A stretch of DNA of 64,000 bases, from assembly GCF_002113885.1 (NCBI RefSeq), contig NW_018408821.1, positions 1,176,135 to 1,240,134 on the forward strand, written 5' to 3'. Numbering within the stretch: the stretch's first letter is position 1; each line of letters starts with the position of its first letter. Made by a program: the position numbers and the translations under genes. Origin of the DNA: Mizuhopecten yessoensis. Taxonomy: Eukaryota. Positions 11,845-62,719 of this stretch are shown one piece after another. Under the pieces are notes generated by a model. It saw nothing but the letters and a program-made list of their open reading frames with translations. It made no database searches and was not told where the DNA came from.

Positions 11845-12550
11845 TTATTTTCTCCTGCCAAATGGTTTCCAGCTTTTTTCTCAGACACACCTAGACGGAT
11901 ACTTATCAAACTTCACATGTGCATTGGTTGGCATATCTAGATGTGCATACTACATTTCATTAACCGATCAGTCATCAAACATGGCTGCCGTGACTTCTGA
12001 TTAAGACATATTGATTTTTTTCTGTGTAGATTGGAATGAAAGTTAGTGAAAATGATATCTACGTAACAATTTTTATGTGTGAAACAAACCAAAGTTGGCC
12101 TTTTCCGCAGTGTGCTTACTGATTGGCTAGATATTGACCGATTTTGCTCAAAATGTGTTATTGTCTAGCTTCTGATTGGCCGAAATCTATATATTGCCTG
12201 ATTTTAATCAAGTTGGTATGTGGGTTTAAATTGTTATACGAATACTACTGCAAACAGCGATTAATGATTGGACACAAATTGTCAACTGGCCTGTTATTGG
12301 TTAAAAGAATAAAAAATGTTCCGTGTTTGTGCAAATGTAGTTTGTGAACACTTTTGGAGTTTATGTTTTCTAATTGGACCAATTACCGCTATTTTCCGAC
12401 TTTTGAAATGGTCAACATTTTGGTATTGACCGATTTTAATCAAATGTTGTATGTATGGACTTTATGACATTACGATTTCTGATGCATCATTGTGACTATG
12501 TGGGCAGTTATGGGGTTATCTGGGATGGTCCCATTATAATCAGGATTTGT
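11845..12550. mobile_element. Probable Helentron-associated (HINE-like) element with degenerate internal repeats
   Basis: Recurrent tgattggc...attgaccgatttt(g/a)..caaa..g modules at ~12120, ~12173 and ~12425, plus atcaaacttcacatg and aacatggctgcc motifs that I associate with mollusc Helentron-derived repeats. Confidence 0.4.
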
Positions 12551-13127
12551 TATTGTTTGCTGTTTCTTTGAGTATAACGATTTTGTATAAAGTGGTATTA
12601 GCTCTAACGACATATTATTTTGGCGCATTGTGACAAGAGCAGCATGTTGTATGATGTTACTATATCTGCATTGTCGGTCGTGTTTGTTGGCACTGCCGAT
12701 TCGTTGTTTGTTACGGTTTTTAGTTGTATCAAATCAATAAATTCTGCGCATGTTGGGAACACATATACTTGATGGCGGTTATTAGAAAACAATCAGTCAG
12801 GTATAGGACGCTAACTGTTCCTCGTTGTGTAAATATATAGCCAGCTAACCGTGCTCAATATCTCTAGGTTAAGCACATTAAGGCCATGTAATGGGAAAGA
12901 CAAACATATAAACATGTCTGGCTGTCTCCAGGTCTCGTCAATGAGTATAGAATATTCGTTCAAACTAAATGACCAGTGGGTAGTCGTTCCAGATGACACA
13001 TAAATCAGTTTGCTGCATAGTACGTTTCATCCTCATCAATTTTCAATATAAACAATTTTTTTAATTAACTAAGAATTCGGAATATCAACTACAAACACGT
13101 GAAATCTTTTAGAGATCCTACCAAGAT

Positions 13128-13590
13128 AAAGAAAAACTTGCCAAGTCCTTCAATTATACAGTTAAGCCTATCAACGATGTGTTGTATTTAAATAAAAAGA
13201 AGTTCATTTACTAAGTCGATCGTATATACTCTACACAATTTGAAACTAAAGCCACTGCATACTCTATTTCAACTGTCGCTTTCCTCGACCTTTACTTACA
13301 ACATGACAGACAGGAACGGCTTAATACTAAGTAGTACGATGAGCATGCATTTTTTGATTTCCTATCGTGAGCTCTTTCTTTCTTTATTGCAACATTCATG
13401 ATTTCCCTTACCAGGGTTTTTACAGGTCGCAATTAATTCGATATTCAAGAGTTTGTTCTGTATTACACGGTATTCCTGATATATTTCGAGTGATGGCGGG
13501 CAAACTGACGAGACAGAATTTTGAGAGATACAGGCTGATAAAGATTGGGCGCAAGTTTTATTGTAGTCATTATGCTCTCGTTTGAAAATG
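13128..13590 (+). mobile_element. Penelope-like (Neptune-type) reverse transcriptase fragment, pseudogenic
   Basis: Degenerate translation KLAKSFNYT..INDVLYLN...DRIY....E.K....VAFLDLYLQHDRQERLNTK*YD...FPIVSSF..CNI....GFYRSQLIRYSRVCS matches PLE RT motifs (FRYIDDVL, ASFLDL, TKLYDKRDDF, SQLIRYSR). Confidence 0.8.
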
Positions 13591-31584: not shown

Positions 31585-33500
31585 AGTTATTTCTTCTTTC
31601 ATTAGCTTTAAAAATACAATTTGCTAAATTCTTAATAACAGTCACATTTTCTGAAGTCATCAGCTCCAGAAATTTTACCATATTTGGATTGGTATACTAT
31701 CTTCGTTGGATAACCTGTGATCTTGAGTCAGAAAACTTGCAACAAGCAATGATAAAAAGGTACTCATCTTCCAACACATTACAGAAAGTACATATTCTCA
31801 ATTGATACTGATTGAAACAGGTCTATGCCATCGCCTTAACTCTACACTGAGGTGATGTGATGAAACTTTCTGTCCTGTCATCGCTTACACTTTATTTGCA
31901 ATATCCAAGTACTTTTTGTATTCAAAATTACATGTGTCGATCAGTTGTTCATCAAACCTACCTCGGGATGACCCGGTAAACTCAACATTCTAGTCATGTA
32001 CAAAAAACATCTCTGACTCTTCTTTTAAATAGACACATAACATATTTATACTACCTACCGCCTCGAAATACCATACATAACCAAATCCATGGGTATAAAG
32101 CAATGACTTTACTAAACTTGCCCAATCATTGACATCATGCGACTCACACTGATCATACAGTACCTTATAAACAGATTATTTCCACGCACAATTTTTAACC
32201 AATACTTTATAATTCTGTTATACCTCAACAGCCTCAAAGGCGTACGACCATGTTCACCATATACAAAACTATTCTGTGTGGTAGATTCGACGCCCAGTAA
32301 CCTTTTAACTTGAAATGTAACCTCTCAATAGCCATATCAGTATGGAAACCAACACCTCGGTCCCATAACCTAGCACTGGACTGACTAGTTTATCAAATAA
32401 ACTGCACATGTGTTTAGGACTCAGTCAAATAAACTTTTTTGTCCACTTTTCCAACCTTGTTCCGCTTACGTTTTTTGAGTTTCCGAAAAGGCATCCCCTG
32501 CCGTAAACACAAGATCTAAGTTGGACAATCTGCTAACAATCTCAATCTCCTGGCCACCTAGGAAAAAAGTAAGGAGTCGCTGAACCTTCTTCTCTTGCGA
32601 AACACCATAACTTTTGTTTTTCACTATGTTTACCTTCATTTTCCATCTTTCACAGTAGTCATGCAAAATATCCAATCCCAACTGTAAACCAACAGCTGTG
32701 TCTGCAATAATGGTTATATCATCTGCATGCAACAGAAGGAATACTTTTAGGAAGTTAACTGATATACTCTCAAAACCTTTCACAATCAATTCGTTCTCCA
32801 GATAATTAACATGCAAATAGAAAGGGTGAACGACTTTCACCTTGTCTTACCCATGTGACACAAATAAACTCATCTGATACTTCATCATAAACTTTAACTC
32901 TAGACTTAGCAGTGTTGTACATTGACTTTTGGGAAATCTTCAAAAGTGCAAAAATATTGTCTATTTGATTTGATAAAATGTGAAATTAACCCGTGTAAAT
33001 GAAACATATTTTCCACAGTGCAATGCTCAGCTCTAAAGCCTGCTTGGGCATCTACATATACCCCATGCTCCTCTGCCCAGGCAGGGAGTCTGCTGTTAAA
33101 CACTCTAGTAAATAACTTTCCTACTACACATAACAGAGTTATTCCTCTGTAGTTTTCCACATTTGATAATGGCCCCTTTTATGCAAGGGAATGCCGTATC
33201 CATCAGACCACGAATCTAGAAAAATGCCAGATTTAAAAATGTTATTAAAACTCTTGTTGAAACATGGTTTTAAAATATGTTTACCAATAATCAAAAACTC
33301 ATTTATAATCAAAGGACCAGCACTCTTACCATTTTTCGACTGTTTTGCAGCCTTTCAACTTCTTCAATACTGATATCAACATTCGGACTCTCAGACCCCA
33401 CTTGCGTTTGGTAATTATAATATCTCTCATTAAACTCAATTATGTCGTCATCCGGTGTAAAAATGGATCTACTTGGTTGTACACCATTGAGAAAATATCT
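31585..33500 (-). mobile_element. Decayed LINE ORF2 (RTE-X-like), RT plus C-terminal Cys/His region
   Basis: ENYRGITLLCVVGKLFTRV...QAGFR; LLLHADDI...GLQLGLD.L..YCERWKMKVN; C-terminal WHRPVS...ICTFCNVLEDEY-like segment. Many frameshifts and stops. The clade call is tentative. Confidence 0.8.
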
Positions 33501-36475: not shown

Positions 36476-37345
36476 GATAAATAGTGTTGTATTGAAAGTT
36501 GTTATGAAAATAGCGGCTATTTGCATAAACACATTATTATGCAAATTATATTCTAAAATTGTATATTTACCTTTACACGGTCATGACAAGGCCCTTGATT
36601 TACCATTGTATAGAAAATTATTCTGTTTAAACGAGACAACGAATCATTAATGTTATTTAATGGGATAACTTGTTCGTTTTAACGAGGGAACTAATGGATT
36701 TTAACAAAACAATTAACGCATTAAATGGAGATCTGTACTTATTTTTTAAATTAACGCTTCCTCAACAACCAATTATCTTAAAAAGTTAGATATCAGTCAA
36801 ATGTGATCTAAGAATAATGTAAAACAAAATACTGCGCATAAGGTGTATACGGCAGGTGTGTCATCATCTTCGTATTAACCTATATATATGTTCGCTGACG
36901 ATTTCCTATCTAACTTAACACACATATGACCTCGTGTTATCGCGGGATGTGTCCGTGCATCTATATGCCAGATAACCTACTTGACGCTTATCACTGTATA
37001 TTACGTAAGTCTAAGCTCCTCGTCTTCAAATGATGAAAGTGATAATATATTTCAGCAATACTGCGCCTGATAACGTTTGAGTTGGTCACGTTGTCGTACT
37101 GCTGGTCTATGCTTTCCCCACGTGCTATGATTCACTATCACTGTGCACTGTTTTCTCAATAGGTTACAGTATACAAACGCATCAAGGATTTTGAAACGTA
37201 CAGCTGCATTAACCGTATACGATCATTCGTTTATAGACTCAATATTATCGCATCTTACACAATATCTATGAAGAGGTGAATTTTATCAACAGTAGCATAC
37301 ACACGTGTTGCTTTTTACACAAAAACATATATTTTGAAACTCAAC

Positions 37346-38548
37346 ATGAATGAGGAAAGGAGGGGAAGTTTGAAGACGGCCAGTGATGGCGATGAAACGT
37401 TTAACTTCGACGGTGTATTTCGTGATGTCAATGACAAAAATACGCGCGTGAAATTGTACTCTGCACAAGCCAGCGTCAAAGACGGAAAATGGACAGAAGC
37501 CGAAACTATTTTGAACGAAACAATTAAAAGTCTTTCGGAAGGACACGATCAGCGAAACCTTAAGCTTGTGCTCAGGGAAATAGAACGGTACCAGAAATTC
37601 CACATAGCCATGGCAAGTCCAGCAGTTTCCGGCATAAACTGGATTGATGTATGTGAGCGCAAACCGGAAATGTATTTTGAAAAATTTGACGAATTACCCC
37701 AGAGTATTTTTACTCTGAAGAACTGGCGCCTTGCAGAGAACGTCTTGGTAGGACGTCGTCTGCTGTCACATCAGTGGATTGCCAACAAAATCCGGGAACT
37801 TCACTGCAGTCACGTGAGAGCTGGTATGCTGCTTGGAGTTCTTGTTGATCAGCGCGTGCAAGAAGATGGAATCCTAGTATACTACTATCCTCTGACGGCC
37901 AAGGAAAAGAGGTTTTACATGCATGACGTCGTCAGTAATCATCTCAGAGATATCGAGCTCGTGTTTCCGTTTCCACCACTTCAGTCCATTATGAAAACGG
38001 AGATTCACTGCCCGGATGAGGGTTGGGAAATCGACGAGAAACTAGCATTACAACTTGGAGAAGGTGAAGTCTTTCTCAGAGAATACTCAGTAAAGTTTTT
38101 AAAATCTCTTGGACGAGAAGATTTATTCCTTTTTGATCCGGCTTGTTCTACAGGTCAGTTTCTTTCAACGATGAAAGCTGGACTTCCAAATTGTTTCACG
38201 TTCGGACAAGACTTAAGCTCGTGCATGGTAAAGTACGCCAAAAACCGCGTGGACGAAGCTAGGTGTGCAAATGCCCTTGACCCTCAAGTGCCAGACGAAA
38301 CTGCCGATGTCGAGTTTGTCAGGTTCATCAACTCGGAGGTAGTTAAAGCCAAAGAGGCAAGGATAATGATTGAACCGTTATTAAAACCCCTAAAAACAGG
38401 AGGATACATGATAACTTTTGGACATACGCCAGTGTTAGTTTCAGCAGCTGACTTTAAAATGTCGGGACGTTTCGAGATTATGCAATGTGTCGGAGGAGAC
38501 CCGGAATGGGACGGAATATTTCAATATTACGTATGTAAGAAGATTTAA
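37346..38548 (+). CDS. Intronless class I SAM-dependent transferase, isonocardicin synthase (Nat; 3-amino-3-carboxypropyl transferase)-like, 400 aa
   Basis: Uninterrupted 1.2-kb ORF, GC-richer than its flanks, with a caacATG start context. Motif I LFDPACSTGQFL, acidic GQDLS, VRFINSEVV, LKTGGYMITFGHTPVL, terminal IFQYY. The SAM-dependent fold is well supported; the Nat-family assignment comes from recalled motifs and needs a search. Confidence 0.85.
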   Translation: MNEERRGSLKTASDGDETFNFDGVFRDVNDKNTRVKLYSAQASVKDGKWTEAETILNETIKSLSEGHDQRNLKLVLREIERYQKFHIAMASPAVSGINWIDVCERKPEMYFEKFDELPQSIFTLKNWRLAENVLVGRRLLSHQWIANKIRELHCSHVRAGMLLGVLVDQRVQEDGILVYYYPLTAKEKRFYMHDVVSNHLRDIELVFPFPPLQSIMKTEIHCPDEGWEIDEKLALQLGEGEVFLREYSVKFLKSLGREDLFLFDPACSTGQFLSTMKAGLPNCFTFGQDLSSCMVKYAKNRVDEARCANALDPQVPDETADVEFVRFINSEVVKAKEARIMIEPLLKPLKTGGYMITFGHTPVLVSAADFKMSGRFEIMQCVGGDPEWDGIFQYYVCKKI

Positions 38549-38602: not shown

Positions 38603-38608
38603 AATAAA
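38603..38608 (+). promoter_or_regulatory. Polyadenylation signal AATAAA for the SAM-transferase gene
   Basis: AATAAA 55 nt after the stop codon; a second one near 38775. Confidence 0.45.
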
Positions 38609-39480: not shown

Positions 39481-39701
39481 ATTGTGACACAATCAATGTT
39501 TTAGGCAGGGTAATACAATTATCTCTATGTCACATTGTGACACAATCAGTGTTCTAGGCAGGGTAATACAATTATCTCTGTGTCACATTGTGACACAATC
39601 AGTGTTTTAGGCAGGGTAATACAATTATCTCTGTGTCACATTGTGACACAATCAGTATTTTAGGCAGGGTAATACAGTTATCTCTGTGTCACATTGTGAC
39701 A
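39481..39701. repeat. 53-bp minisatellite, ~4.2 copies
   Basis: Unit attgtgacacaatcagtgttttaggcagggtaatacaattatctctgtgtcac. Confidence 0.95.
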
Positions 39702-45597: not shown

Positions 45598-48500
45598 GCC
45601 ACGTAGATAGTTGTTAGGGCAGCCACGTAGATAGTTGTTAGAGCAGACACTTTGATAGTTGTTAGGGCAGACCCGTACATAGTTGTTAGGGCATACACGT
45701 AGATAGTTGTTAGAGTAGACACGTACATAGTTGTTAGGGCAAACACGTAGATAGTTGTTAGGGCAGACACGTAGATAGTTGTTAGGGCAGACATGTAGAT
45801 AGTTGTTAGGGCTGACACGTAGATAGTTGTTTGGGCAGACACGTAGATAGTTGTTAGGGCAGCCACGTAGATAGTTGTTAGGGCAGACATGTAGATAGTT
45901 GTTAGGGCAGACACGTAGATAGTTGTTAGGGCAGACACGTAGATAGTTGTTAGGGCAGACACGTAGATAGTTGTTAGGGCAGACACGTAGATAGTTGTTA
46001 GGGCAGACACGTAGATAGTTGTTAGGGCAGACACGTAGATAGTTGTTAGGGCAGACACGTAGATAGTTGTTAGGGCAGACACGTAGATAGTTGTTAGGGC
46101 AGACACGTAGATAGTTGTTAGGGCAGACACGTAGATAGTTGTTAGGGCAGACACGTAGATAGTTGTTAGGGCAGACACGTAGATAGTTGTTAGGGCAGAC
46201 ACGTAGATAGTTGTTAGGGCAGACACGTAGATAGTTGTTAGGGCAGACACGTAGATAGTTGTTAGGGCAGACACGTAGATAGTTGTTAGGGCAGACACGT
46301 AGATAGTTGTTAGGGCAGACACGTAGATAGTTGTTAGGGCAGACACGTAGATAGTTGTTAGGGCAGACACGTAGATAGTTGTTAGGGCAGACACGTAGAT
46401 AGTTGTTAGGGCAGACACGTAGATAGTTGTTAGGGCAGACACGTAGATAGTTGTTAGGGCAGACACGTAGATAGTTGTTAGGGCAGACACGTAGATAGTT
46501 GTTAGGGCAGACACGTAGATAGTTGTTAGGGCAGACACGTAGATAGTTGTTAGGGCAGACACGTAGATAGTTGTTAGGGCAGACACGTAGATAGTTGTTA
46601 GGGCAGACACGTAGATAGTTGTTAGGGCAGACACGTAGATAGTTGTTAGGGCAGACACGTAGATAGTTGTTAGGGCAGACACGTAGATAGTTGTTAGGGC
46701 AGACACGTAGATAGTTGTTAGGGCAGACACGTAGATAGTTGTTAGGGCAGACACGTAGATAGTTGTTAGGGCAGACACGTAGATAGTTGTTAGGGCAGAC
46801 ACGTAGATAGTTGTTAGGGCAGACACGTAGATAGTTGTTAGGGCAGACACGTAGATAGTTGTTAGGGCAGACACGTAGATAGTTGTTAGGGCAGACACGT
46901 AGATAGTTGTTAGGGCAGACACGTAGATAGTTGTTAGGGCAGACACGTAGATAGTTGTTAGGGCAGACACGTAGATAGTTGTTAGGGCAGACACGTAGAT
47001 AGTTGTTAGGGCAGACACGTAGATAGTTGTTAGGGCAGACACGTAGATAGTTGTTAGGGCAGACACGTAGATAGTTGTTAGGGCAGACACGTAGATAGTT
47101 GTTAGGGCAGACACGTAGATAGTTGTTAGGGCAGACACGTAGATAGTTGTTAGGGCAGACACGTAGATAGTTGTTAGGGCAGACACGTAGATAGTTGTTA
47201 GGGCAGACACGTAGATAGTTGTTAGGGCAGACACGTAGATAGTTGTTAGGGCAGACACGTAGATAGTTGTTAGGGCAGACACGTAGATAGTTGTTAGGGC
47301 AGACACGTAGATAGTTGTTAGGGCAGACACGTAGATAGTTGTTAGGGCAGACACGTAGATAGTTGTTAGGGCAGACACGTAGATAGTTGTTAGGGCAGAC
47401 ACGTAGATAGTTGTTAGGGCAGACACGTAGATAGTTGTTAGGGCAGACACGTAGATAGTTGTTAGGGCAGACACGTAGATAGTTGTTAGGGCAGACACGT
47501 AGATAGTTGTTAGGGCAGACACGTAGATAGTTGTTAGGGCAGACACGTAGATAGTTGTTAGGGCAGACACGTAGATAGTTGTTAGGGCAGACACGTAGAT
47601 AGTTGTTAGGGCAGACACGTAGATAGTTGTTAGGGCAGACACGTAGATAGTTGTTAGGGCAGACACGTAGATAGTTGTTAGGGCAGACACGTAGATAGTT
47701 GTTAGGGCAGACACGTAGATAGTTGTTAGGGCAGACACGTAGATAGTTGTTAGGGCAGACACGTAGATAGTTGTTAGGGCAGACACGTAGATAGTTGTTA
47801 GGGCAGACACGTAGATAGTTGTTAGGGCAGACACGTAGATAGTTGTTAGGGCAGACACGTAGATAGTTGTTAGGGCAGACACGTAGATAGTTGTTAGGGC
47901 AGACACGTAGATAGTTGTTAGGGCAGACACGTAGATAGTTGTTAGGGCAGACACGTAGATAGTTGTTAGGGCAGACACGTAGATAGTTGTTAGGGCAGAC
48001 ACGTAGATAGTTGTTAGGGCAGACACGTAGATAGTTGTTAGGGCAGACACGTAGATAGTTGTTAGGGCAGACACGTAGATAGTTGTTAGGGCAGACACGT
48101 AGATAGTTGTTAGGGCAGACACGTAGATAGTTGTTAGGGCAGACACGTAGATAGTTGTTAGGGCAGACACGTAGATAGTTGTTAGGGCAGACACGTAGAT
48201 AGTTGTTAGGGCAGACACGTAGATAGTTGTTAGGGCAGACACGTAGATAGTTGTTAGGGCAGACACGTAGATAGTTGTTAGGGCAGACACGTAGATAGTT
48301 GTTAGGGCAGACACGTAGATAGTTGTTAGGGCAGACACGTAGATAGTTGTTAGGGCAGACACGTAGATAGTTGTTAGGGCAGACACGTAGATAGTTGTTA
48401 GGGCAGACACGTAGATAGTTGTTAGGGCAGACACGTAGATAGTTGTTAGGGCAGACACGTAGATAGTTGTTAGGGCAGACACGTAGATAGTTGTTAGGGC

Positions 48501-50790
48501 AGACACGTAGATAGTTGTTAGGGCAGACACGTAGATAGTTGTTAGGGCAGACATGTAGATAGTTGTTAGGGCAGCCACGTAGATAGTTGTTAGGGCAGAC
48601 ACGTAGATAGTTGTTAGGGCAGACACGTAGATAGTTGTTAGGGCAGACACGTAGATAGTTGTTAGAGTAGACACGTAGATAGTTGTTAGGGCAGCCACGT
48701 AGATAGTTGTTATGACAGACACGTAGATAGTTGTTAGGGAAGACATGTAGATAGTTGTTAGGGCAGACACGTAGATAGTTGTTAGGTCAGACATGTAGAT
48801 ACTTGTTAGGGCAGACATGTAGGTAGTTGTTAGGGCAGATACGTAAATAGTTGTTAGGGCAGACACAGATAGTTGTTAGGGCAGACCCGTAGATAGTTGT
48901 TAGGGCTGACACGTAGATAGTTGTTATGGCAGACATGTATATAGTTGTTAGGGCAGACATGTAGATTGTTGTTAGGGCAGACATGTAGGTAGTTGTTAGG
49001 GCAGATACGTAGATTGTTGTTAGGGCAGCCACGCAGATAGTTGTTAGGGCAGACACGTAGATAGTTGTTCGGGCAGCCACGCAGATAGTTGTTAGGACAA
49101 ACACTTGGATAGTTGTTTGGGCAGACACGTAGTTAGTTTTTAGGGCAGACACGTAGATAGTTGCTAGGGCAGACACGTAGATAGTTGTAGGGAAGACACG
49201 TAGATAGTTGTTAGGGTAGACACGTAGATAGTTGTTAGGGCTGACACGTAGATAGTTGTTAGGGCTGACACGTAGATAGTTGTAAGTGCAGACACGTAGA
49301 TAGTTGTTAGAGCAGCCACGTAGATAGTTGTTAGGGCAGACACGTAGATAGTTGTAGGGAAGACACGTAGATAGTTGTTCGGGCAGCCACGTAGATAGTT
49401 GTTAGGACAAACACTTTGATAGTTGTTTGGGCAGCCACGTAGATAGTTGTTAGGGCAGACACGTAGATAGTTGTTAGGGCAGACACGTAGATATTTGTTA
49501 GGGCTGACACGTAGATAGTTGTAAGTGCAGACACGTAGATAGTTGTTAGGGCAGATACGTAGATAGTTGTTCGGGCAGCCACGTAGATAGTTGTTAGGGC
49601 AGCCACGTACATAGTTGTTACTGCAGACATGTAGATAGCTGTTAGGGCAGACACGTAGATAGTTGTTAAGGCAGACACGTAGATAGTTGTTAGGGCAGCC
49701 GCGTAGATAGTTGTTAGGGCAGCCACGTAGATATTTGTTAGGGCTGACACGTAGATTAGAGCAGACACTTTGATAGTTGTTAGGGCAGCCACGTAGATAG
49801 GTGTTAGGGCAGACACGTAGATAGTTGTTAGGGCAGAAACGTAGATATTTGTTAGGGCTGACACGTAGATTAGAGCAGACACTTTGATAGTTGTTAGGGC
49901 AGCCACGTAGATAGCTGTTAGGGCAGCCACGTAGATAGTTGTTATGACAGACACGTAGATAGTTGTTAGGGAAGACATGTAGATAGTTGTTAGGGCAGGC
50001 ACGTAGATAGTTGTTAAGGCAGACACGTAGATAGTTGTTAGGGCAGTCACATAGATAGTTGTCAGGGAAGCCACGTATATAGTTGTTAGGGCAGACACGT
50101 AGACAGTTGTTAGGGCAGCCACGTAGATAGCTGTTAGGGCAGCCACGTAGATAGTTGTTATGACAGACACGTAGATAGTTGTTAGGGAAGACATGTAGAT
50201 AGTTGTTAGGGCAGGCACGTAGATAGTTGTTAAGGCAGACACGTAGTTAGTTGTTAGGGCAGCCACGTAGATAGTTGTTAAGGCAGACACGTAGTTAGTT
50301 GTTAGGGCAGCCACGTAGATAGTTGTTAGGTCAGCCACGTAGATAGTTGTTAGAGCAGACACTTTGATAGTTGTTAGGGCAGCCACGTAGATAGTTGTTC
50401 GGGCAGCCACGTAGATGGTTGTTAGGGCAGACACGTAGATATTTGTTAGGGCAGACACGTAGATAGTTGTTCGGGCAGACACGTAGATAGTTGTTCGGGC
50501 AGACACGTAGATAGTTGTTCGGGCAACCACGTAGATAGTTGCTAGGGCAGCCACGTAGATAGTTGTTAGGGCAGCTACGTAGATAGTTGTTAGGGCAGCC
50601 ACGTACATATTTGTTACTGCAGACATGTAGATAGTTGTTAGGGCAGCCACGTAGATAGTTGTTAGGTCAGCCACGTAGATAGTTGTTAGAGCAGACACTT
50701 TGATAGTTGTTAGGGCAGCCACGTAGATAGGTGTTAGGGCAGACACGTAGATAGTTGTTAGGGCAGCCACGTAGATATTTTTAAGGGCAA
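45598..50790. repeat. 24-bp tandem array (~215 units) with a homogeneous core and diverged flanks
   Basis: Unit gtagatagttgttagggcagacac; invariant from ~45891 to ~48553, variant units on both sides. Confidence 0.98.
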
Positions 50791-54181: not shown

Positions 54182-55280
54182 TCAAACCTATCAAACCTAT
54201 CAAACCAAACCTACAAACCTATCAAACCTACAAACCTATCAAACCAAACCTATCAAACCTATCAATCCTACAAACCTATCAAACCTACAAACCTATCAAA
54301 CCTACAAACCTATCAAACCTACAAACCTACAAACCTATCAAACCTACAAACATATCAAACCTATCAAACCCTATCAACCTTATCAAACCTATTAAACCTA
54401 CAAACCTATCAAACCTACAAACCTACAAACCGATCAAACCGATCAAACCTATCAAACCTACAAACCTATCAAACCTACAAACATACAAACCTATCAAACC
54501 AAACCTATTAAACCTACAAACCTATCAAACCAAACCTATCAAACCAAATCTATCAAACCTATCAAACCTACAAACCTATCAAACCTATCAAACCTATCAA
54601 ACCTACAAACCTACAAACCTCTCAAACCTATCAAACCAAACCTACAAACCTATCAAACCTATCAAACCTACAAACCTATCAAACCTACAAACTTATCAAA
54701 CCTATCAAACCTATCAAACCAAATCTACAAACCTATCAAACCTACAAACTTATCAGACCAAACCTATCAAACCTATCAAGCCTACAAACCTACAAACCTA
54801 TCAAACCTACAAACCTATCAAACCTATCAAACCTATCAAACCAAACCTACAAACCTATCAAACCTACAAACTTATCAGACCAAACCTATCAAACCTATCA
54901 AGCCTACAAACCTATCAAACTTCTCAAACCTATCAAACCTATCAAACCAAACCTTCAAACCTATCAAACCTACAAACCTATCAAGCCTACAAACCTATCA
55001 AACCTACAAACCTATCAAACCTATAAAACCTATCAAACCTATCAAACCAAACCTACAAACCTATCAAACCTACAAACCTATCAAACCTATCAAACCAGAC
55101 CTACAAACCTATCAAACCTACAAACCTATCAAACCAAACCTATCAAACCTATCAAACCTATCAAACCAAACCTACAAACCTATCAACCCTATCAAACCAG
55201 ACCTACAAACCTATCAAACCTACAAACCTATCAAACCAAACCTACAAACCTATCAAACCACCTATCAAACCTATCAAACA
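54182..55280. repeat. Compound simple repeat of 9-, 8- and 5-bp units
   Basis: Mixed aaacctatc, aaacctac and aaacc units. Confidence 0.97.
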
Positions 55281-56188
55281 TATGATAACAAATGAGTTTC
55301 CGTCATAAAAGTCCTTCCACCTCTTGACTTGTCCGCGACAGCCTTCAGTTAAGAATTACAATAGTCAATGTCAAGTTAATCACCTGTTTATCTTTATATT
55401 TTGATATGTATGTAAACAAGCCTTTCAATTTCCAATCACCAACTATGTCTGGTCATTCGTAGCGACGCGACAAATAGGCTCATTGCAGATATAGAATCGA
55501 CAAAAATTGAGAATAATCAATTACATTTGTAAGGCGAACAATGGACACGAGTACTGTAACATTTGCTATTAATCTGTCTACCCTATAGTTTAGACAATGT
55601 GAAAGAAATACTGTGAGGTTAATCTTAAAGTTAACAATGCTAATTTAACAAAGAAGCATACAATTAGAAGCATATAACTTGAACAATAAAGTGTATCAAA
55701 CGCCCCTCACTTTACAGGACCAAATCAATAATTAATTCAATGACCGATGATAATAGTTTAATGGTCATGTTCATTTGATATATCCAAACACCTCCGGTTT
55801 CTGCATATATTGTATTAATGAAAACTTATTCAGTCAAAAAAAGCACAGTCACCGGATATTACATATGTAAGTTACATCTTATATCCGATAACGCCAAACA
55901 TTCCGGTGAATCGAAGATTTTTTTTGTTTTGAATTTATTAGCTATTTAAATCAATTTCAAGTAAAATGTCACGTATAATATAAGACTATTTAGTTTCGTA
56001 TTTGTAACGGGATGTGTATAGAATTTGTCTTGAGATCAATATACGCCACGTGCGGAGGATATATCACTACACAGTATTAGTAATGGATGCTTTGCGAAAA
56101 CGGAAATCACATGTAGTCGGTAACATCACAACGTCACAGGGTGCCTTTTCACGGAGGAGAGGTATATCCTTACGCCTTCCGGAGGCTG

Positions 56189-59507: not shown

Positions 59508-60935
59508 GTCAGCATGAATAAATATTCGACATCGTCAATAATAACTGTTCGACCAATAAGGCGTCTTGTGTGTCAGCATTATAAACTAACTATACAACCA
59601 ATAAGGCGTCTTGTGTGTCAGCATTATACACTAGCTATACAACCAATAAGGCGTCTTGTGTGTCAGCATTATAAACTAACTATGCAACCAAAAAGGCGTC
59701 TTGTGTGTCAGCATTATAAACTAACTATCCAACCAAAAAGGCGTCTTGTGTGTCAGCATTATAAACTAAATATACAACCAATAAGGCGTCTTGTGTGTCA
59801 GCATTATAAACTAACTATCCAACCAAAAGGGCGTCTTGTGTGTCAGCATTATACACTAACTATACAACCAATAAGGCGTCTTGTGTGTCAGCATTATAAA
59901 CTAACTACATGTATACAACCAATAAGGCGTCTTGTGTGTCAGCATTATAAACTAACTATACAACCAATAAGGCGTCGTGTGTGTCAACATCATAAACTAA
60001 CTATACAACCATTAAGGCGCAATATTCGACATCGTCAATAATAACTGTCCAACCAATAAGGCGTCTTGTGTGTCAGCATTATACACTAACTATACAACCA
60101 ATAAGGCGCATTATTCGTCATCTTCAATAATAACTGTCCAACCAAAAAGGCGTCGCGTGTGTCAGCATTATAAACTAACTATACAACCAATAAGGCGTCG
60201 TGTGTGTCAGCATTATAAACTAACTATACAACCAATAAGGCGTCGTGTGTGTCAGCATTATAAACTACCTATACAACCAATAAGGCGTCGCGTGTGTCAG
60301 CATTATAAACTAACTATACAACCATTAAGGCGTCTTGTGTGTCAGCATTATACACTAACTAAACAACCAATAAGGCGCATTACTCGTCATCTTCAATAAT
60401 AACTGTCCAACCAAAAAGGCGTCTTGTGTGTCAGCATTATAAACTAACTATACAACCAATAAGGCGTCTTGTGTGTCAGCATTATAAACCAACTATACAA
60501 CCAATAAGGCGTCTTATGTGTCAGCATTATACACTAACTATACAACCAAAAAGGCGTCTTGTGTGTCAGCATTATACACTAACTATACAACCAAAAAGGC
60601 GTCGTGTGTGTCAGCATTATAAACTAATTATACAACCAATAAGGCGTCGTGTGTGTCAGCATTATAAACTAACTATACAACCAAAAAGGCGTCTTGTGTG
60701 TCAGCATTATACACTAACTATACAACCAATAAGGCGTCGTGTGTGTTAGCATTATAAACTAACTATACAACCAAAAAGGCGTCTTGTGTGTCAGCATTAT
60801 AAACTAACCACATGTATACAACCAATAAGGCGCATTATTCGTCATCGTCATTAATAACTGTCCAACCAAAAAGGCGTCGTGTGTGTCAGCATTGTAAACT
60901 AACTATACAACCAATAAGGCGTCTTGTGTGTCCGC
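59508..60935. repeat. 45-bp minisatellite interleaved with a 44-bp variant unit
   Basis: A unit ccaataaggcgtcttgtgtgtcagcattataaactaactatacaa; B unit ccaataaggcgcattattcgtcatcttcaataataactgtccaa. Confidence 0.97.
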
Positions 60936-62719
60936 ATATAAAGTTAGATATGAAATTGACATACAAATATGACGATTGATTTGCCATGATAAATTATTCT
61001 CGTAACAAGGTACCTTTTGTACCGACTAGTTTCTTCAACTATAAAGGCGCGTTGTTTGTTAGGTAGCACTTTTGCCTGTTGTCCCAACAAAAAAGACGCT
61101 TTGTATTTAAATTCAATTTAAAATTCAATATTCTTCTTATATGTCGACAATGATCTGGCTTCTATCTTTTGTAATTTTGCTGATTTGTTCAAATGAAAAT
61201 GTTGACATGTAGAGTTCTCCTGTTCTAAACATCGGTGTTCTTTTATTGGTAATCAAGAGTTTTTATTGAACCGGTATCACACTTATCTGTTTCCTGATAG
61301 TGTAATTGAACGACAAGATAAGTCAGCTCTTCTGGCAAAATACGGGATTTATAAAGTCAACATGTGACCAATGGTATAACAAGATTCCCAATAGAGGACG
61401 TGGTATAAAATGAAAATGCGCCCTTATAGTCGACACTGATCCGTGCTATGAGAGCTTCTGGTACATTTCCTAATACAAGTGAATGTAAAAATAGAGTATT
61501 AATGGGTTAAAGATACCTTAAGTGACCGGGTATTCGTGTTTCTAATGATACATATCATCAATGATGCTATCTTATATTTTCGAATAGGACCACAGTGATG
61601 GCTGTAAGCAGTTGGTGATACATGTTCATATTTAAAGAAAATGTAAAAAAAATAAGCAGCATAGATAACGATATGTCCCAGACCTTGCGCCGTTGAGTAC
61701 CATACGTAAAGAGATAATTTATTCCTTGCTCTATTTAAGGATGCACTCCTCAAAAGTCAAAACATTCCTGAATTAGTTTGTTTTCTTATAAATATTTTGG
61801 GAAAAATGCAAAAAAAGAAATGATATGTCCGTGTGCTCGGTTTTTGTCTTGGATTGGTCATGGATACCAATTTAACATACTATGTGATTTTAGGTGTTTA
61901 TATTTGGTATTGACCATTTGCAAAACAGCGTCATACAATATCTTCCAAATGCGTTTTCAAATTTTTTTTTTTTTTATTATGGTAGTTAAATTTCAAACAT
62001 ATTCTTTTAACTCAGAAAAGCAATTTAAGATACCCCTACCCCTTTTTATTAATGAACAAAATCTCATTTTTCATTTCTGTTTCGTCGATATAACACTTTA
62101 TATGAAAAACGTTCTGCTATTAAATTTATTTTAATATTAAATGGATTAAATAAAAATGTTCTAAAACAGACACAAAATGGGGCGACCGTGTGCTTCTTTT
62201 TGCCCATGATAATTTATTATAGTTTTCATCTTTTCGGTGTCACAAATCAAAAGTGCTTCAGTAACACTAAATATGTAAAAAAAAAAAAAAATATCAATTA
62301 TGCATAATTTTCCACTTTGTTGCATACTATTTCATCATATTCAACACTATAAAGTTTTACAGCAAAATGAACTTGCTTCAATTAAAACTGGGGACACAAT
62401 AAACGATTGATCAGTCTTGTGTCAAAAAGGTGTAAATATGGCCTTTGATGAAACGTAAGAAATACACTTTTTCGAAATGCCGTCGTATTGATTTAAAAAA
62501 AAAAATGTATTTAAGCAATTCTACAAACAACAGGCGTCTAGTTTTTTCACATATTTTCAGATGCTTGTTTGCTTTTAAAATTGATCACAATTTGTTAAAT
62601 AATATAAAAACCTGTTACACGAGATCAAAACGAAATTTGAACGTTGTTTTAACTTCTGAAGAGTACAGATAAAATATAAGGCCTCACCTCTAATGCCGTA
62701 CAATATGCATTAGTAAGTC

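What the first reader, a model, noticed from the sequence alone, without database searches (positions are those of the whole stretch)
37346..38548. Bacterial nocardicin Nat-like SAM:3-amino-3-carboxypropyl transferase homolog in an animal-type genome (candidate HGT-derived biosynthetic enzyme)
Seen: an intact, intronless 400-aa ORF, the only convincing non-transposon gene in 64 kb, flanked by LINE relics and minisatellites. Knowledge (recalled, not searched): DPACSTG, VRF(L/I)N(A/S)EVV, GG..(L/I).FGHTPVL, terminal F(Q/E)(F/Y)Y and the upstream LPQ..F.L..., L..GE..LR segments are the hallmarks I associate with isonocardicin synthase Nat of Nocardia uniformis and its bacterial homologs. Nat transfers the aminocarboxypropyl group of SAM, not the methyl group, in beta-lactam biosynthesis. 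Inference: an invertebrate has acquired and kept an antibiotic-pathway tailoring enzyme without the rest of the cluster. That implies an undescribed aminocarboxypropylated metabolite, or a detoxification/defence reaction, in the host.
Basis: partly seen in the sequence, partly recalled or inferred. Interest (0 to 1): 0.9.

Follow-up and report, generated by a model that had tools for sequence, protein, structure and literature searches.

The report
Scallop paralog of mollusc aminocarboxypropyl transferase
This is an intact scallop gene for a bacterial-type enzyme that probably moves the amino-acid side chain of SAM, not its methyl group, onto a small molecule; the enzyme family was described in molluscs in 2025, but this copy belongs to an old sister branch that lies outside the published gene cluster and has no known substrate.

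Summary
Window 37346-38548 (+) is an intact, single-exon 400-aa ORF. Its residues 151-399 match isonocardicin synthase Nat (PDB 8zhu, E=1.4e-37). Its predicted fold matches the Nat crystal structures (TM 0.90, E=4e-29).

The window comes from a 1.47-Mb contig of the Mizuhopecten yessoensis assembly. This rules out contamination and a private acquisition.

Venugopalan & Schmidt (JACS 2025) showed that molluscs carry a bur-ox cluster (FmtATR NRPS, ACT, p450, FMOs). They showed that its Nat-like ACT O-aminocarboxypropylates tyrosinols (+101 Da) on the way to bursatellin/oxazinin, and they proposed ancient HGT.

What I add:
- Mollusc ACTs form two old clades, each 100/99 support and each holding gastropods and bivalves.
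- The assayed, clustered enzyme is clade B.
- The window gene is clade A, about 40% identical to clade B.
- Clade A is unclustered in scallop, pearl oyster and mussel.
- It is under strong purifying selection.
- It occurs in gastropods absent from the published bur-ox list.

Its chemistry is probably ACP transfer. Its substrate is unknown.

Verdict: a new member of a known kind, of moderate interest.

The parts
37346..38548 (+). Single-exon coding sequence (400 codons plus stop) of a clade A Nat-family aminocarboxypropyl transferase homologue
   Evidence: ORF. It is identical to public protein P0001, called on contig NEDP02005494.1. GC is 0.44 against about 0.36 in the flanks. It carries the consensus residue at all 54 alignment columns that are at least 90% conserved.
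37346..37657 (+). N-terminal extension (aa 1-104; three predicted helices at 31-45, 49-62 and 67-85). It is shared with mollusc clade B and the rotifer clade and is largely missing from the short (~335 aa) bacterial homologues.
   Evidence: Structure prediction and residue counts before position 100. PMC11869996's supplement notes that McalACT is 96 residues longer than Nat. A search with this region alone found only the scallop orthologues.
37796..38542 (+). Region aligned to Nat (aa 151-399): substrate-side beta/alpha part plus the class I SAM-binding Rossmann-like domain
   Evidence: phmmer against 8zhu_A gives E=1.4e-37, query 151-399 to chain 83-325. Foldseek gives 8zhv_B at E=4.3e-29, TM 0.90 normalised to the target.
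38135..38413 (+). Generic methyltransferase-domain match (aa 264-356)
   Evidence: Pfam Methyltransf_25 and Methyltransf_11 at E about 1e-4. Only Methyltransf_11 passes its cut-off.
38135..38155 (+). Motif I variant D-P-A-C-S-T-G (aa 264-270) in place of the usual GxGxG SAM-binding loop
   Evidence: D264, A266 and C267 are invariant. S268, T269 and G270 are at least 90% conserved in 57 sequences. Nat has D-A-A-C-S-T-G at the aligned position.
38603..38608 (+). First AATAAA after the stop codon (candidate polyadenylation signal; inference only)
   Evidence: Pattern scan.

Best explanation
The ORF is a functional, vertically inherited nuclear gene of the Yesso scallop (Mizuhopecten yessoensis). 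It encodes a Nat-family SAM-dependent 3-amino-3-carboxypropyl (ACP) transferase.

It belongs to 'clade A'. This is one of two mollusc ACT lineages that arose by duplication before gastropods and bivalves diverged, after a probably single, ancient acquisition from bacteria. The other lineage, clade B, is the ACT of the published bur-ox (bursatellin/oxazinin) cluster.

Shown here: homology, fold, conservation of every family-invariant residue, purifying selection, clade placement and lack of clustering.

Inferred: the enzyme binds SAM in the Nat manner, so a substrate nucleophile attacks the C-gamma of the methionine moiety. This transfers the ACP group and releases 5'-methylthioadenosine. By analogy with both characterised relatives, the nucleophile is most likely a phenolic hydroxyl of a tyrosine- or hydroxyphenylglycine-type small molecule.

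The gene sits alone in three species and also occurs in gastropods that are not on the published bur-ox list. I therefore favour a substrate or role distinct from the clustered clade B enzyme.
For: Homology and fold:
- Nat homology at E=1.4e-37.
- AlphaFold model with pLDDT 91.8. Its best PDB matches are the four Nat chains (E about 1e-29, TM 0.87-0.90), 20 orders of magnitude ahead of ordinary methyltransferases.
- All 18 invariant and 36 near-invariant family residues are retained.

Host gene:
- The protein lies on a 1.47-Mb contig of GCA_002113885.2.
- Paralogs on other contigs of the same assembly are named M. yessoensis by NCBI.

Selection:
- Against two scallop-like orthologues, dN is 0.11-0.12 while dS is saturated (2.5 or not computable), so omega is below 0.1.
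- Nucleotide similarity stops at the CDS borders.

Two clades:
- In the careful ML tree, clades A and B each have 100/99 support. Each has gastropods sister to bivalves. A+B has 88/91 support.
- Four species (Mizuhopecten, Mytilus, Tegillarca, Potamilus) have both clades. Identity is 38-43% within a species against 52-65% within a clade.

The assayed enzyme is clade B:
- McalACT is modelled as UniProt A0A6J8C2P8, and its top BLAST hits are CAC5390678.1 and VDI72202.1. These are members of the clade B cluster P0286.
- In M. galloprovincialis these lie next to p450 genes and the Formyl_trans_N/AMP-binding/PP-binding/NAD_binding_4 NRPS.

Clade A is unclustered:
- The 64-kb window holds no p450, FMO or NRPS exon (tblastx).
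- None lies within 10 kb of the gene in Pinctada or M. galloprovincialis.

Occurrence outside the bur-ox list:
- Clade A occurs in Patella, Pomacea and Batillaria. None appears in the paper's supplement.
- The paper states that some patellogastropods have the ACT homologue but no NRPS.
Against: - No enzymology or expression data exist for any clade A member. ACP transfer rather than methyl transfer is inferred from homology alone, and I could not obtain the Nat structure paper to check the residues that set regiochemistry.
- Only ten sites are fixed differently between clades A and B, and half lie in the N-terminal extension. The active sites may therefore be nearly the same and the two clades could share substrates.
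- Unclustered genes can still serve a clustered pathway.
- Absence of clade B or the NRPS in Pomacea, Batillaria and Patella rests on a word-indexed search and on a published list, not on genome scans.
- The deep branching among molluscs, rotifers and bacteria changes with sampling.
Confidence: 0.7

Rival explanations
1. Clade A is simply a second, dispersed ACT of the same bur-ox pathway. It would O-aminocarboxypropylate tyrosinol intermediates in another tissue, stage or branch (for example oxazinin versus bursatellin), with no separate metabolite.
For: - McalACT is promiscuous toward N-acyl tyrosinols.
- Clades A and B share the N-terminal extension and all family-invariant residues.
- Few sites are fixed differently between them.
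- Most bivalves examined carry both clades.
Against: - The two clades have been kept apart with similar constraint since before the gastropod/bivalve split.
- Clade A is never next to p450, FMO or NRPS genes in the three loci seen. Clade B is next to them in four of the five clade B loci with readable neighbours; P0029/L007 had none within 10 kb.
- Clade A is present in gastropods that are not on the published bur-ox list.
Confidence: 0.25
2. The protein has reverted to, or always was, an ordinary methyltransferase, and the Nat resemblance reflects fold only.
For: Pfam recognises only generic methyltransferase domains, and weakly. The chemistry cannot be read from sequence, as PMC11869996 notes for ACTs in general.
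Against: The match to Nat covers 249 residues with family-specific motifs, including the unusual D-x-A-C-S-T-G loop. The fold match to Nat is 20 orders of magnitude better than to any methyltransferase. Both biochemically tested members of this family, Nat and McalACT, transfer ACP.
Confidence: 0.06
3. Recent, lineage-specific HGT of a stand-alone antibiotic-tailoring gene into this animal, or bacterial contamination or a chimeric join in the assembly.
For: The gene is intronless, its closest non-animal relatives are bacterial, and its GC is higher than that of the flanks.
Against: - Orthologues at 49-81% identity exist in scallop-like, pearl oyster, ark shell, mussel, unionid, dreissenid and gastropod genomes, with a species-like topology.
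- The best bacterial identity is only about 37-41% over 75% of the length.
- The gene lies 1.2 Mb into a 1.47-Mb contig, between host minisatellites and retroelements.
- Its GC of 0.44 equals that of the other scallop ACT genes.
Confidence: 0.02
4. Decaying or non-functional retained copy.
For: The clade A copy in the M. coruscus assembly shows frame disruptions. No expression evidence was obtainable here.
Against: The 400-codon frame is intact, omega is below 0.1, and every conserved residue is kept. Clade A copies are intact in Pinctada, M. galloprovincialis and many others.
Confidence: 0.03

Closest known systems
McalACT / bur-ox aminocarboxypropyltransferase of molluscs (Venugopalan & Schmidt, J Am Chem Soc 2025, PMC11869996)
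   Same: - Same protein family and the same phylum.
- Same ~400-aa architecture, with a ~95-aa N-terminal helical extension in front of the Nat-like core.
- Intronless gene.
- Same invariant residues.
- Presumably the same SAM-to-MTA ACP-transfer chemistry.
   Different: - The window protein is only 38-43% identical to clade B proteins of the same species and sits in the sister clade.
- It is not adjacent to p450, FMO or FmtATR genes, whereas clade B genes are in four of five loci seen (not P0029/L007).
- Its substrate is untested.
- The paper's main text does not mention paralogs, and the ACT BLAST hits it shows are all clade B.
Isonocardicin synthase Nat of Nocardia uniformis (PDB 8zhu/8zhv; Reeve, Breazeale & Townsend 1998, as cited in PMC11869996)
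   Same: Homologous over aa 151-399 at E=1.4e-37 with about 31% identity. Same fold (TM 0.90), the same D-x-A-C-S-T-G, RF/HLN, GHTPVL and C-terminal FQxY motifs, and a phenolic O-ACP transfer precedent.
   Different: Nat lacks the ~95-residue N-terminal extension. It is bacterial, sits in the nocardicin NRPS cluster and acts on a beta-lactam peptide. No such substrate is expected in a scallop.
Other SAM ACP transferases (TYW2, Tsr3, TapT, nicotianamine synthase/CntL, MccD, BtaA)
   Same: Same formal reaction: ACP transfer from SAM with MTA release (named in PMC11869996).
   Different: No detectable sequence relationship in my searches. They are absent from the PDB, Pfam and NCBIfam hits. They have different folds or subfamilies and act on RNA, peptide-nucleotide or lipid acceptors.

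Membership tests
Nat / isonocardicin synthase family (SAM:3-amino-3-carboxypropyl transferases with a class I methyltransferase fold) | Significant sequence homology to Nat across the catalytic region | tested here: met
   phmmer against PDB gives 8zhu_A at E=1.4e-37, query 151-399 to chain 83-325. The next hit has E=0.11.
Nat / isonocardicin synthase family (SAM:3-amino-3-carboxypropyl transferases with a class I methyltransferase fold) | Three-dimensional fold superimposable on the Nat crystal structure | tested here: met
   The model has pLDDT 91.8. Foldseek gives 8zhv and 8zhu at E=4e-29 to 4e-28 with target TM 0.87-0.90. The best non-Nat hit has E=5e-9 and TM 0.35.
Nat / isonocardicin synthase family (SAM:3-amino-3-carboxypropyl transferases with a class I methyltransferase fold) | Family-specific conserved residues and motifs (D-x-A-C-S-T-G loop, R-F-x-N, G-H-T-P, F-Q-x-Y) | tested here: met
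   There are 18 invariant and 36 near-invariant columns in 57 sequences. The window protein has the consensus residue at all 54.
Nat / isonocardicin synthase family (SAM:3-amino-3-carboxypropyl transferases with a class I methyltransferase fold) | Catalyses ACP transfer (MTA released, +101 Da product) rather than methyl transfer | not testable with these tools
   This needs an enzyme assay. It has been shown only for Nat and for the clade B enzyme McalACT.
bur-ox pathway ACT (orthologues of McalACT, mollusc clade B) | Falls in the same orthologous clade as McalACT | tested here: not met
   McalACT corresponds to A0A6J8C2P8 / CAC5390678.1 / VDI72202.1, which belong to cluster P0286 in clade B. 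The window protein is in clade A. Each clade has 100/99 support.
bur-ox pathway ACT (orthologues of McalACT, mollusc clade B) | Genomic clustering with p450, FMO and FmtATR NRPS genes | tested here: not met
   tblastx of p450, FMO and NRPS loci against the 64-kb window gives no hits. The only neighbouring gene call within 10 kb is a spurious minisatellite ORF. Clade B loci do show p450, FMO and NRPS neighbours.
bur-ox pathway ACT (orthologues of McalACT, mollusc clade B) | O-aminocarboxypropylation of N-acyl tyrosinols | not testable with these tools
   No assay was possible. No publication on clade A was found.
Horizontally acquired bacterial gene fixed in an animal lineage | Patchy animal distribution with otherwise bacterial relatives | tested here: met
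   The family has 185 clusters at E<=0.001 in 1.84 billion representatives. Named animal members are only molluscs and Rotaria. Named others are Alphaproteobacteria, Clostridia, Cardinium, Bdellovibrionota and Saccharothrix.
Horizontally acquired bacterial gene fixed in an animal lineage | Animal clade nested within bacterial diversity on a rooted, well-supported tree | tested here: inconclusive
   Molluscs are monophyletic (88/91), but the sister group changes with sampling, from a bacteria-like clade to the rotifer clade.
Horizontally acquired bacterial gene fixed in an animal lineage | Physical integration in host chromosome (not contamination) | tested here: met
   The gene lies on a 1.47-Mb contig with host-type minisatellites and retroelements on both sides. 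Orthologues lie in chromosome-scale scaffolds of other molluscs.

The most novel reading that the evidence does not exclude
Clade A is a second, functionally separate animal aminocarboxypropyl transferase. It would have been retained since before the gastropod-bivalve split and would work outside the bur-ox pathway on an unidentified acceptor. That would mean a still undescribed ACP-modified (homoserine-ether or similar) metabolite class in molluscs, including lineages with no bursatellin machinery.
Probability: 0.4. Interest if true: 0.6.

Novelty: new member of a known kind. Interest (0 to 1): 0.4.

Why it matters
Animal-encoded natural-product enzymes of bacterial origin are rare. The mollusc ACT is one of the few with proven chemistry. 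The family has two equally old, equally constrained branches, and only one is tied to the known cluster. This gives a concrete, cheap target: express the scallop or mussel clade A enzyme and look for +101 Da products. It could lead to a further mollusc metabolite. It also matters for genome mining: counting 'ACT homologues' without separating the clades will mis-score which species have the bursatellin pathway. The patellogastropod case noted in the paper may be an example.

Tried and rejected
(1) Rest of the cluster in the window. I looked by tblastx with p450, FMO, NRPS and SYF1-bearing loci and by Pfam on all large ORFs. Nothing turned up but transposon pieces and repeat-derived false ORFs.

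(2) Conserved synteny for clade A. Pinctada has SYF1/XAB2 downstream and Mytilus has an unannotated 636-aa model. Neither is in the window.

(3) N-terminal extension searched alone, as the operators advise. Only the two scallop-like orthologues came back, and Pfam finds nothing there.

(4) A paper on the Nat crystal structures (8zhu/8zhv), to map residues that dictate ACP versus methyl transfer. It is not in the library.

(5) dN/dS with more distant orthologues. Synonymous sites are saturated, so only an upper bound is possible.

(6) Whether A-T-R-ACT fusion proteins are the sister of molluscs, which would suggest co-transfer of NRPS and ACT. They are not in a quick tree, and the deep nodes are weak.

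(7) Contamination and a recent private HGT. Both rejected, see rival explanations.

(8) Unnamed key sequences (P0002-P0004, P0097 group, P0110/P0123).

Full report
1. THE OBSERVATION

The window has an uninterrupted reading frame from the ATG at 37346 to the stop at 38548 on the + strand, 400 aa. The stop-to-stop frame begins at 37280. These motifs coincide with the consensus of a 57-sequence family alignment.

Pfam sees only weak generic methyltransferase domains at aa 264-356, and NCBIfam sees nothing useful. A phmmer search of PDB sequences returns isonocardicin synthase (8zhu_A) at E=1.4e-37 over aa 151-399, with everything else above E=0.1.

An AlphaFold model built on the alignment is confident: pLDDT 91.8, pTM 0.90. 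Its four best PDB matches are the Nat chains of 8zhv and 8zhu, at E=4e-29 to 4e-28 and target-normalised TM 0.87-0.90. The next matches are ordinary methyltransferases at E about 5e-9.

2. WHERE THE WINDOW COMES FROM AND WHAT SURROUNDS THE GENE

The exact protein is called on contig NEDP02005494.1 (1,473,216 bp) of assembly GCA_002113885.2. Two paralogs from other contigs of the same assembly are named Mizuhopecten yessoensis by NCBI. The window is therefore Yesso scallop.

- The window has no N.
- Repeats: a 24-bp minisatellite of 217 copies at 45600-50789, which yields long spurious ORFs and a spurious public gene call; a 9-bp array at 54182-55283; a 45-bp array at 59552-60942; and a 53-bp array at 39481-39701.
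- A retroelement at 20991-24518 has a 959-aa ORF (zinc knuckle, RT, RNase H, weak Dam-like stretch) between 192-nt direct repeats that are 98% identical.
- A faint RT relic lies at 32469-32846(-).
- No other ORF tested has a credible family match.
- There are no tRNA or Rfam hits.

3. THE FAMILY IS ALREADY DESCRIBED IN MOLLUSCS

A full-text search for 'isonocardicin synthase' returns Venugopalan & Schmidt, J Am Chem Soc 2025 (PMC11869996). They describe a mollusc gene cluster, bur-ox, containing:

- a formylating NRPS (FmtATR);
- an isonocardicin-synthase-like aminocarboxypropyltransferase (ACT);
- a bacterial-like p450;
- two animal FMOs.

They show in vitro that the Mytilus californianus ACT uses SAM to convert N-formyl-tyrosinol to its O-homoserine ether (+101 Da). 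They find oxazinins in mussels and clams. They propose an ancient HGT that predates the divergence of molluscan classes.

4. WHICH ACT IS IN THE WINDOW?

Homology searches give 91 and 188 hits for two queries. An index-free search of 1.84 billion representatives gives 185 clusters at E<=0.001. The family is small.

A careful ML tree of 68 sequences resolves two mollusc clades, each with 100/99 support. Together they have 88/91 support. In each, gastropods are sister to bivalves (the quick versions agree).

- Clade A holds the window protein, two scallop-like orthologues (81% and 78% identity), Pinctada, Tegillarca, Mytilus, Dreissena, Potamilus, Batillaria, Pomacea and Patella.
- Clade B holds the other Mizuhopecten proteins, other scallops, Ostrea, Mytilus, Tegillarca, Potamilus, Sinanodonta, Ruditapes and Haliotis.
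- Mizuhopecten, Mytilus, Tegillarca and Potamilus have both clades. Identity is 38-43% between clades within a species, against 52-65% within a clade across species.

The duplication is therefore older than the gastropod/bivalve split, and both copies have been kept under similar constraint.

5. THE PUBLISHED, ASSAYED ENZYME IS CLADE B

The preprint's supplement models McalACT as UniProt A0A6J8C2P8. Its top BLAST hits are CAC5390678.1 (93%), VDI72202.1 (91%) and CAG2199368.1. These accessions are members of cluster P0286, which is clade B.

Clade B genomic context:

- In M. galloprovincialis contig UYJE01009310.1, VDI72202 lies head-to-head with a p450.
- VDI72207 lies head-to-head with another p450 and about 8 kb from a 1608-aa protein with Formyl_trans_N, AMP-binding, PP-binding and NAD_binding_4 domains. 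This is FmtATR.
- In the scallop, the clade B gene KP79_PYT01546 is 350 bp from a p450, and KP79_PYT18090 is 3 kb from FMO genes.
- An unnamed clade B locus shows p450-ACT-FMO-FMO.
- One further unnamed clade B locus (P0029, L007) has only a 7tm_1 receptor gene and no partner gene within 10 kb.

Clade A genomic context:

- The Mytilus gene VDI70785 is on another contig with no Pfam-bearing neighbour within 10 kb.
- The Pinctada orthologue is flanked by transposon fragments and SYF1.
- tblastx of all these partner loci against the 64-kb window finds no p450, FMO, NRPS or SYF1 exon.

The paper's main text never uses the words paralog, duplicate or copies. Every ACT BLAST hit it shows is at least 53% identical to McalACT, so all are clade B.

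6. IS THE WINDOW GENE FUNCTIONAL?

- The frame is intact.
- It carries the consensus residue at all 54 columns that are at least 90% conserved.
- Against the two closest orthologues, dN is 0.11-0.12 while dS is saturated (2.5, or beyond the estimator). Omega is therefore well below 0.1.
- Nucleotide similarity to those contigs begins and ends at the CDS.
- GC of the CDS is 0.44, like the other scallop ACT genes and above the 0.36 of the flanks.
- All ACT genes seen, in both clades, are single-exon.
- I have no expression data.

7. MECHANISM

Shown: Nat-type fold, an intact SAM-binding loop in its family-specific D-P-A-C-S-T-G form, and all conserved residues.

Inferred: SAM is bound so that an acceptor nucleophile attacks C-gamma of the methionine moiety, giving an ACP (homoserine-type) adduct and MTA. 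Both characterised relatives alkylate a phenolic oxygen of an aromatic amino-acid derivative, so that is the most likely acceptor type.

Ten positions are fixed differently in clades A and B: 15, 21, 26, 37, 41, 138, 142, 150, 276 and 344. Five lie in the N-terminal helical extension. I could not place them relative to the acceptor pocket.

Three observations favour a role separate from bur-ox:

- Clade A is consistently unlinked to the partner genes.
- It is as old and as constrained as clade B.
- It occurs in Patella, Pomacea and Batillaria. None of these is in the paper's supplement, and the paper reports ACT without NRPS for patellogastropods.

I give this about 40%. The main rival is a dispersed second ACT serving the same pathway, at about 25%.

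8. ORIGIN

Named non-mollusc members are a bdelloid rotifer (Rotaria socialis) and bacteria: an Alphaproteobacteria MAG, a Clostridia MAG, Cardinium, Bdellovibrionota and Saccharothrix. Most bacterial proteins are about 335 aa and lack roughly 55 of the N-terminal residues. This pattern fits ancient HGT.

The sister group of the molluscs is unstable: bacteria-like and rotifers. The tree is also unrooted. Direction and number of transfers are therefore not settled here.

9. VERDICT

The homology and the likely bacterial ancestry are right. The 'orphan acquisition' and 'undescribed chemistry' are wrong for the family, which was characterised in 2025.
- The gene is a new member, in an undiscussed sister clade, of a known kind.
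- Interest is moderate.

Noticed in passing
window 20991-24518 (-): Young-looking retroelement. A 959-aa ORF (21450-24329) has a CCHC zinc knuckle, RT, an RNase H-like domain and a weak Dam-like DNA methyltransferase stretch (aa 774-841, E=6e-5, below cut-off). It is bounded by 192-nt direct repeats that are 98% identical. No protease or integrase hit was found. From memory, the RT-RNase H-methyltransferase order recalls DIRS/PAT-like elements; I did not test this.
   Followed up: partly
window 45600-50789: A 5.2-kb minisatellite with a 24-bp unit, about 217 copies, 93% matches and strong GC skew. It creates open frames of 505-1090 aa with artefactual Pfam hits (DUF3432, ALTTAQ_rpt). A 1074-aa 'gene' is called there in the public collection (L001 18249-21203).
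   Followed up: yes
window 54182-55283; 59552-60942; 39481-39701: Three more tandem arrays: 9-bp (or 17-bp) unit x ~134 copies, 45-bp unit x ~31 copies, and 53-bp unit x 4 copies. The 45-bp array yields a 179-aa ORF with spurious Pfam hits.
   Followed up: partly
window 13122-13582 and 2707-2950; L008 7616-8058; L004 ~12120-13470: Short translated similarities (38-82% aa identity over 16-61 aa). Window 13122-13582 matches both intergenic DNA of another scallop contig and a stretch upstream of the Mytilus clade A ACT. Window 2707-2950 matches the scallop contig only. Both are probably interspersed repeat families. Pfam finds nothing in the ORF tested.
   Followed up: partly
L004, L005 (other contigs of the same scallop assembly); supplement of PMC11869996: The scallop has at least three clade B ACT paralogs (KP79_PYT18090 beside FMO genes, KP79_PYT01546 beside a p450, and KP79_PYT09613 listed in the paper). 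The bur-ox ACT-oxidase unit therefore seems duplicated or split in this genome. PYT01546 sits at the end of its contig.
   Followed up: partly
P0110, P0123, P0114, P0208, P0140 (representative-library proteins, organisms unknown): Nat-like ACT domains occur fused to other biosynthetic modules: A-T-R-ACT in one chain of 1155-1208 aa (the bur-ox logic of NRPS reductase plus ACT as a single protein), T-TE-ACT, YcaO-ACT and LGFP-repeat-ACT. In a quick tree the A-T-R-ACT fusions are not sister to the molluscs.
   Followed up: partly
P0318 (Rotaria socialis) with P0094, P0064, P0301, P0303: A bdelloid rotifer and four unnamed ~400-aa proteins form a separate, well-supported clade (99/97). It shares the N-terminal extension with molluscs. 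Its position relative to molluscs changes with sampling, so a shared or an independent acquisition is open.
   Followed up: partly
L002 10013-11211 (Mytilus coruscus CACVKT020001735.1): The clade A ACT in this M. coruscus assembly is broken by frame changes near codons 47 and 244-335 and is annotated as two gene models. The M. galloprovincialis, M. trossulus and M. edulis copies are intact. This is either assembly error or a pseudogene allele.
   Followed up: no
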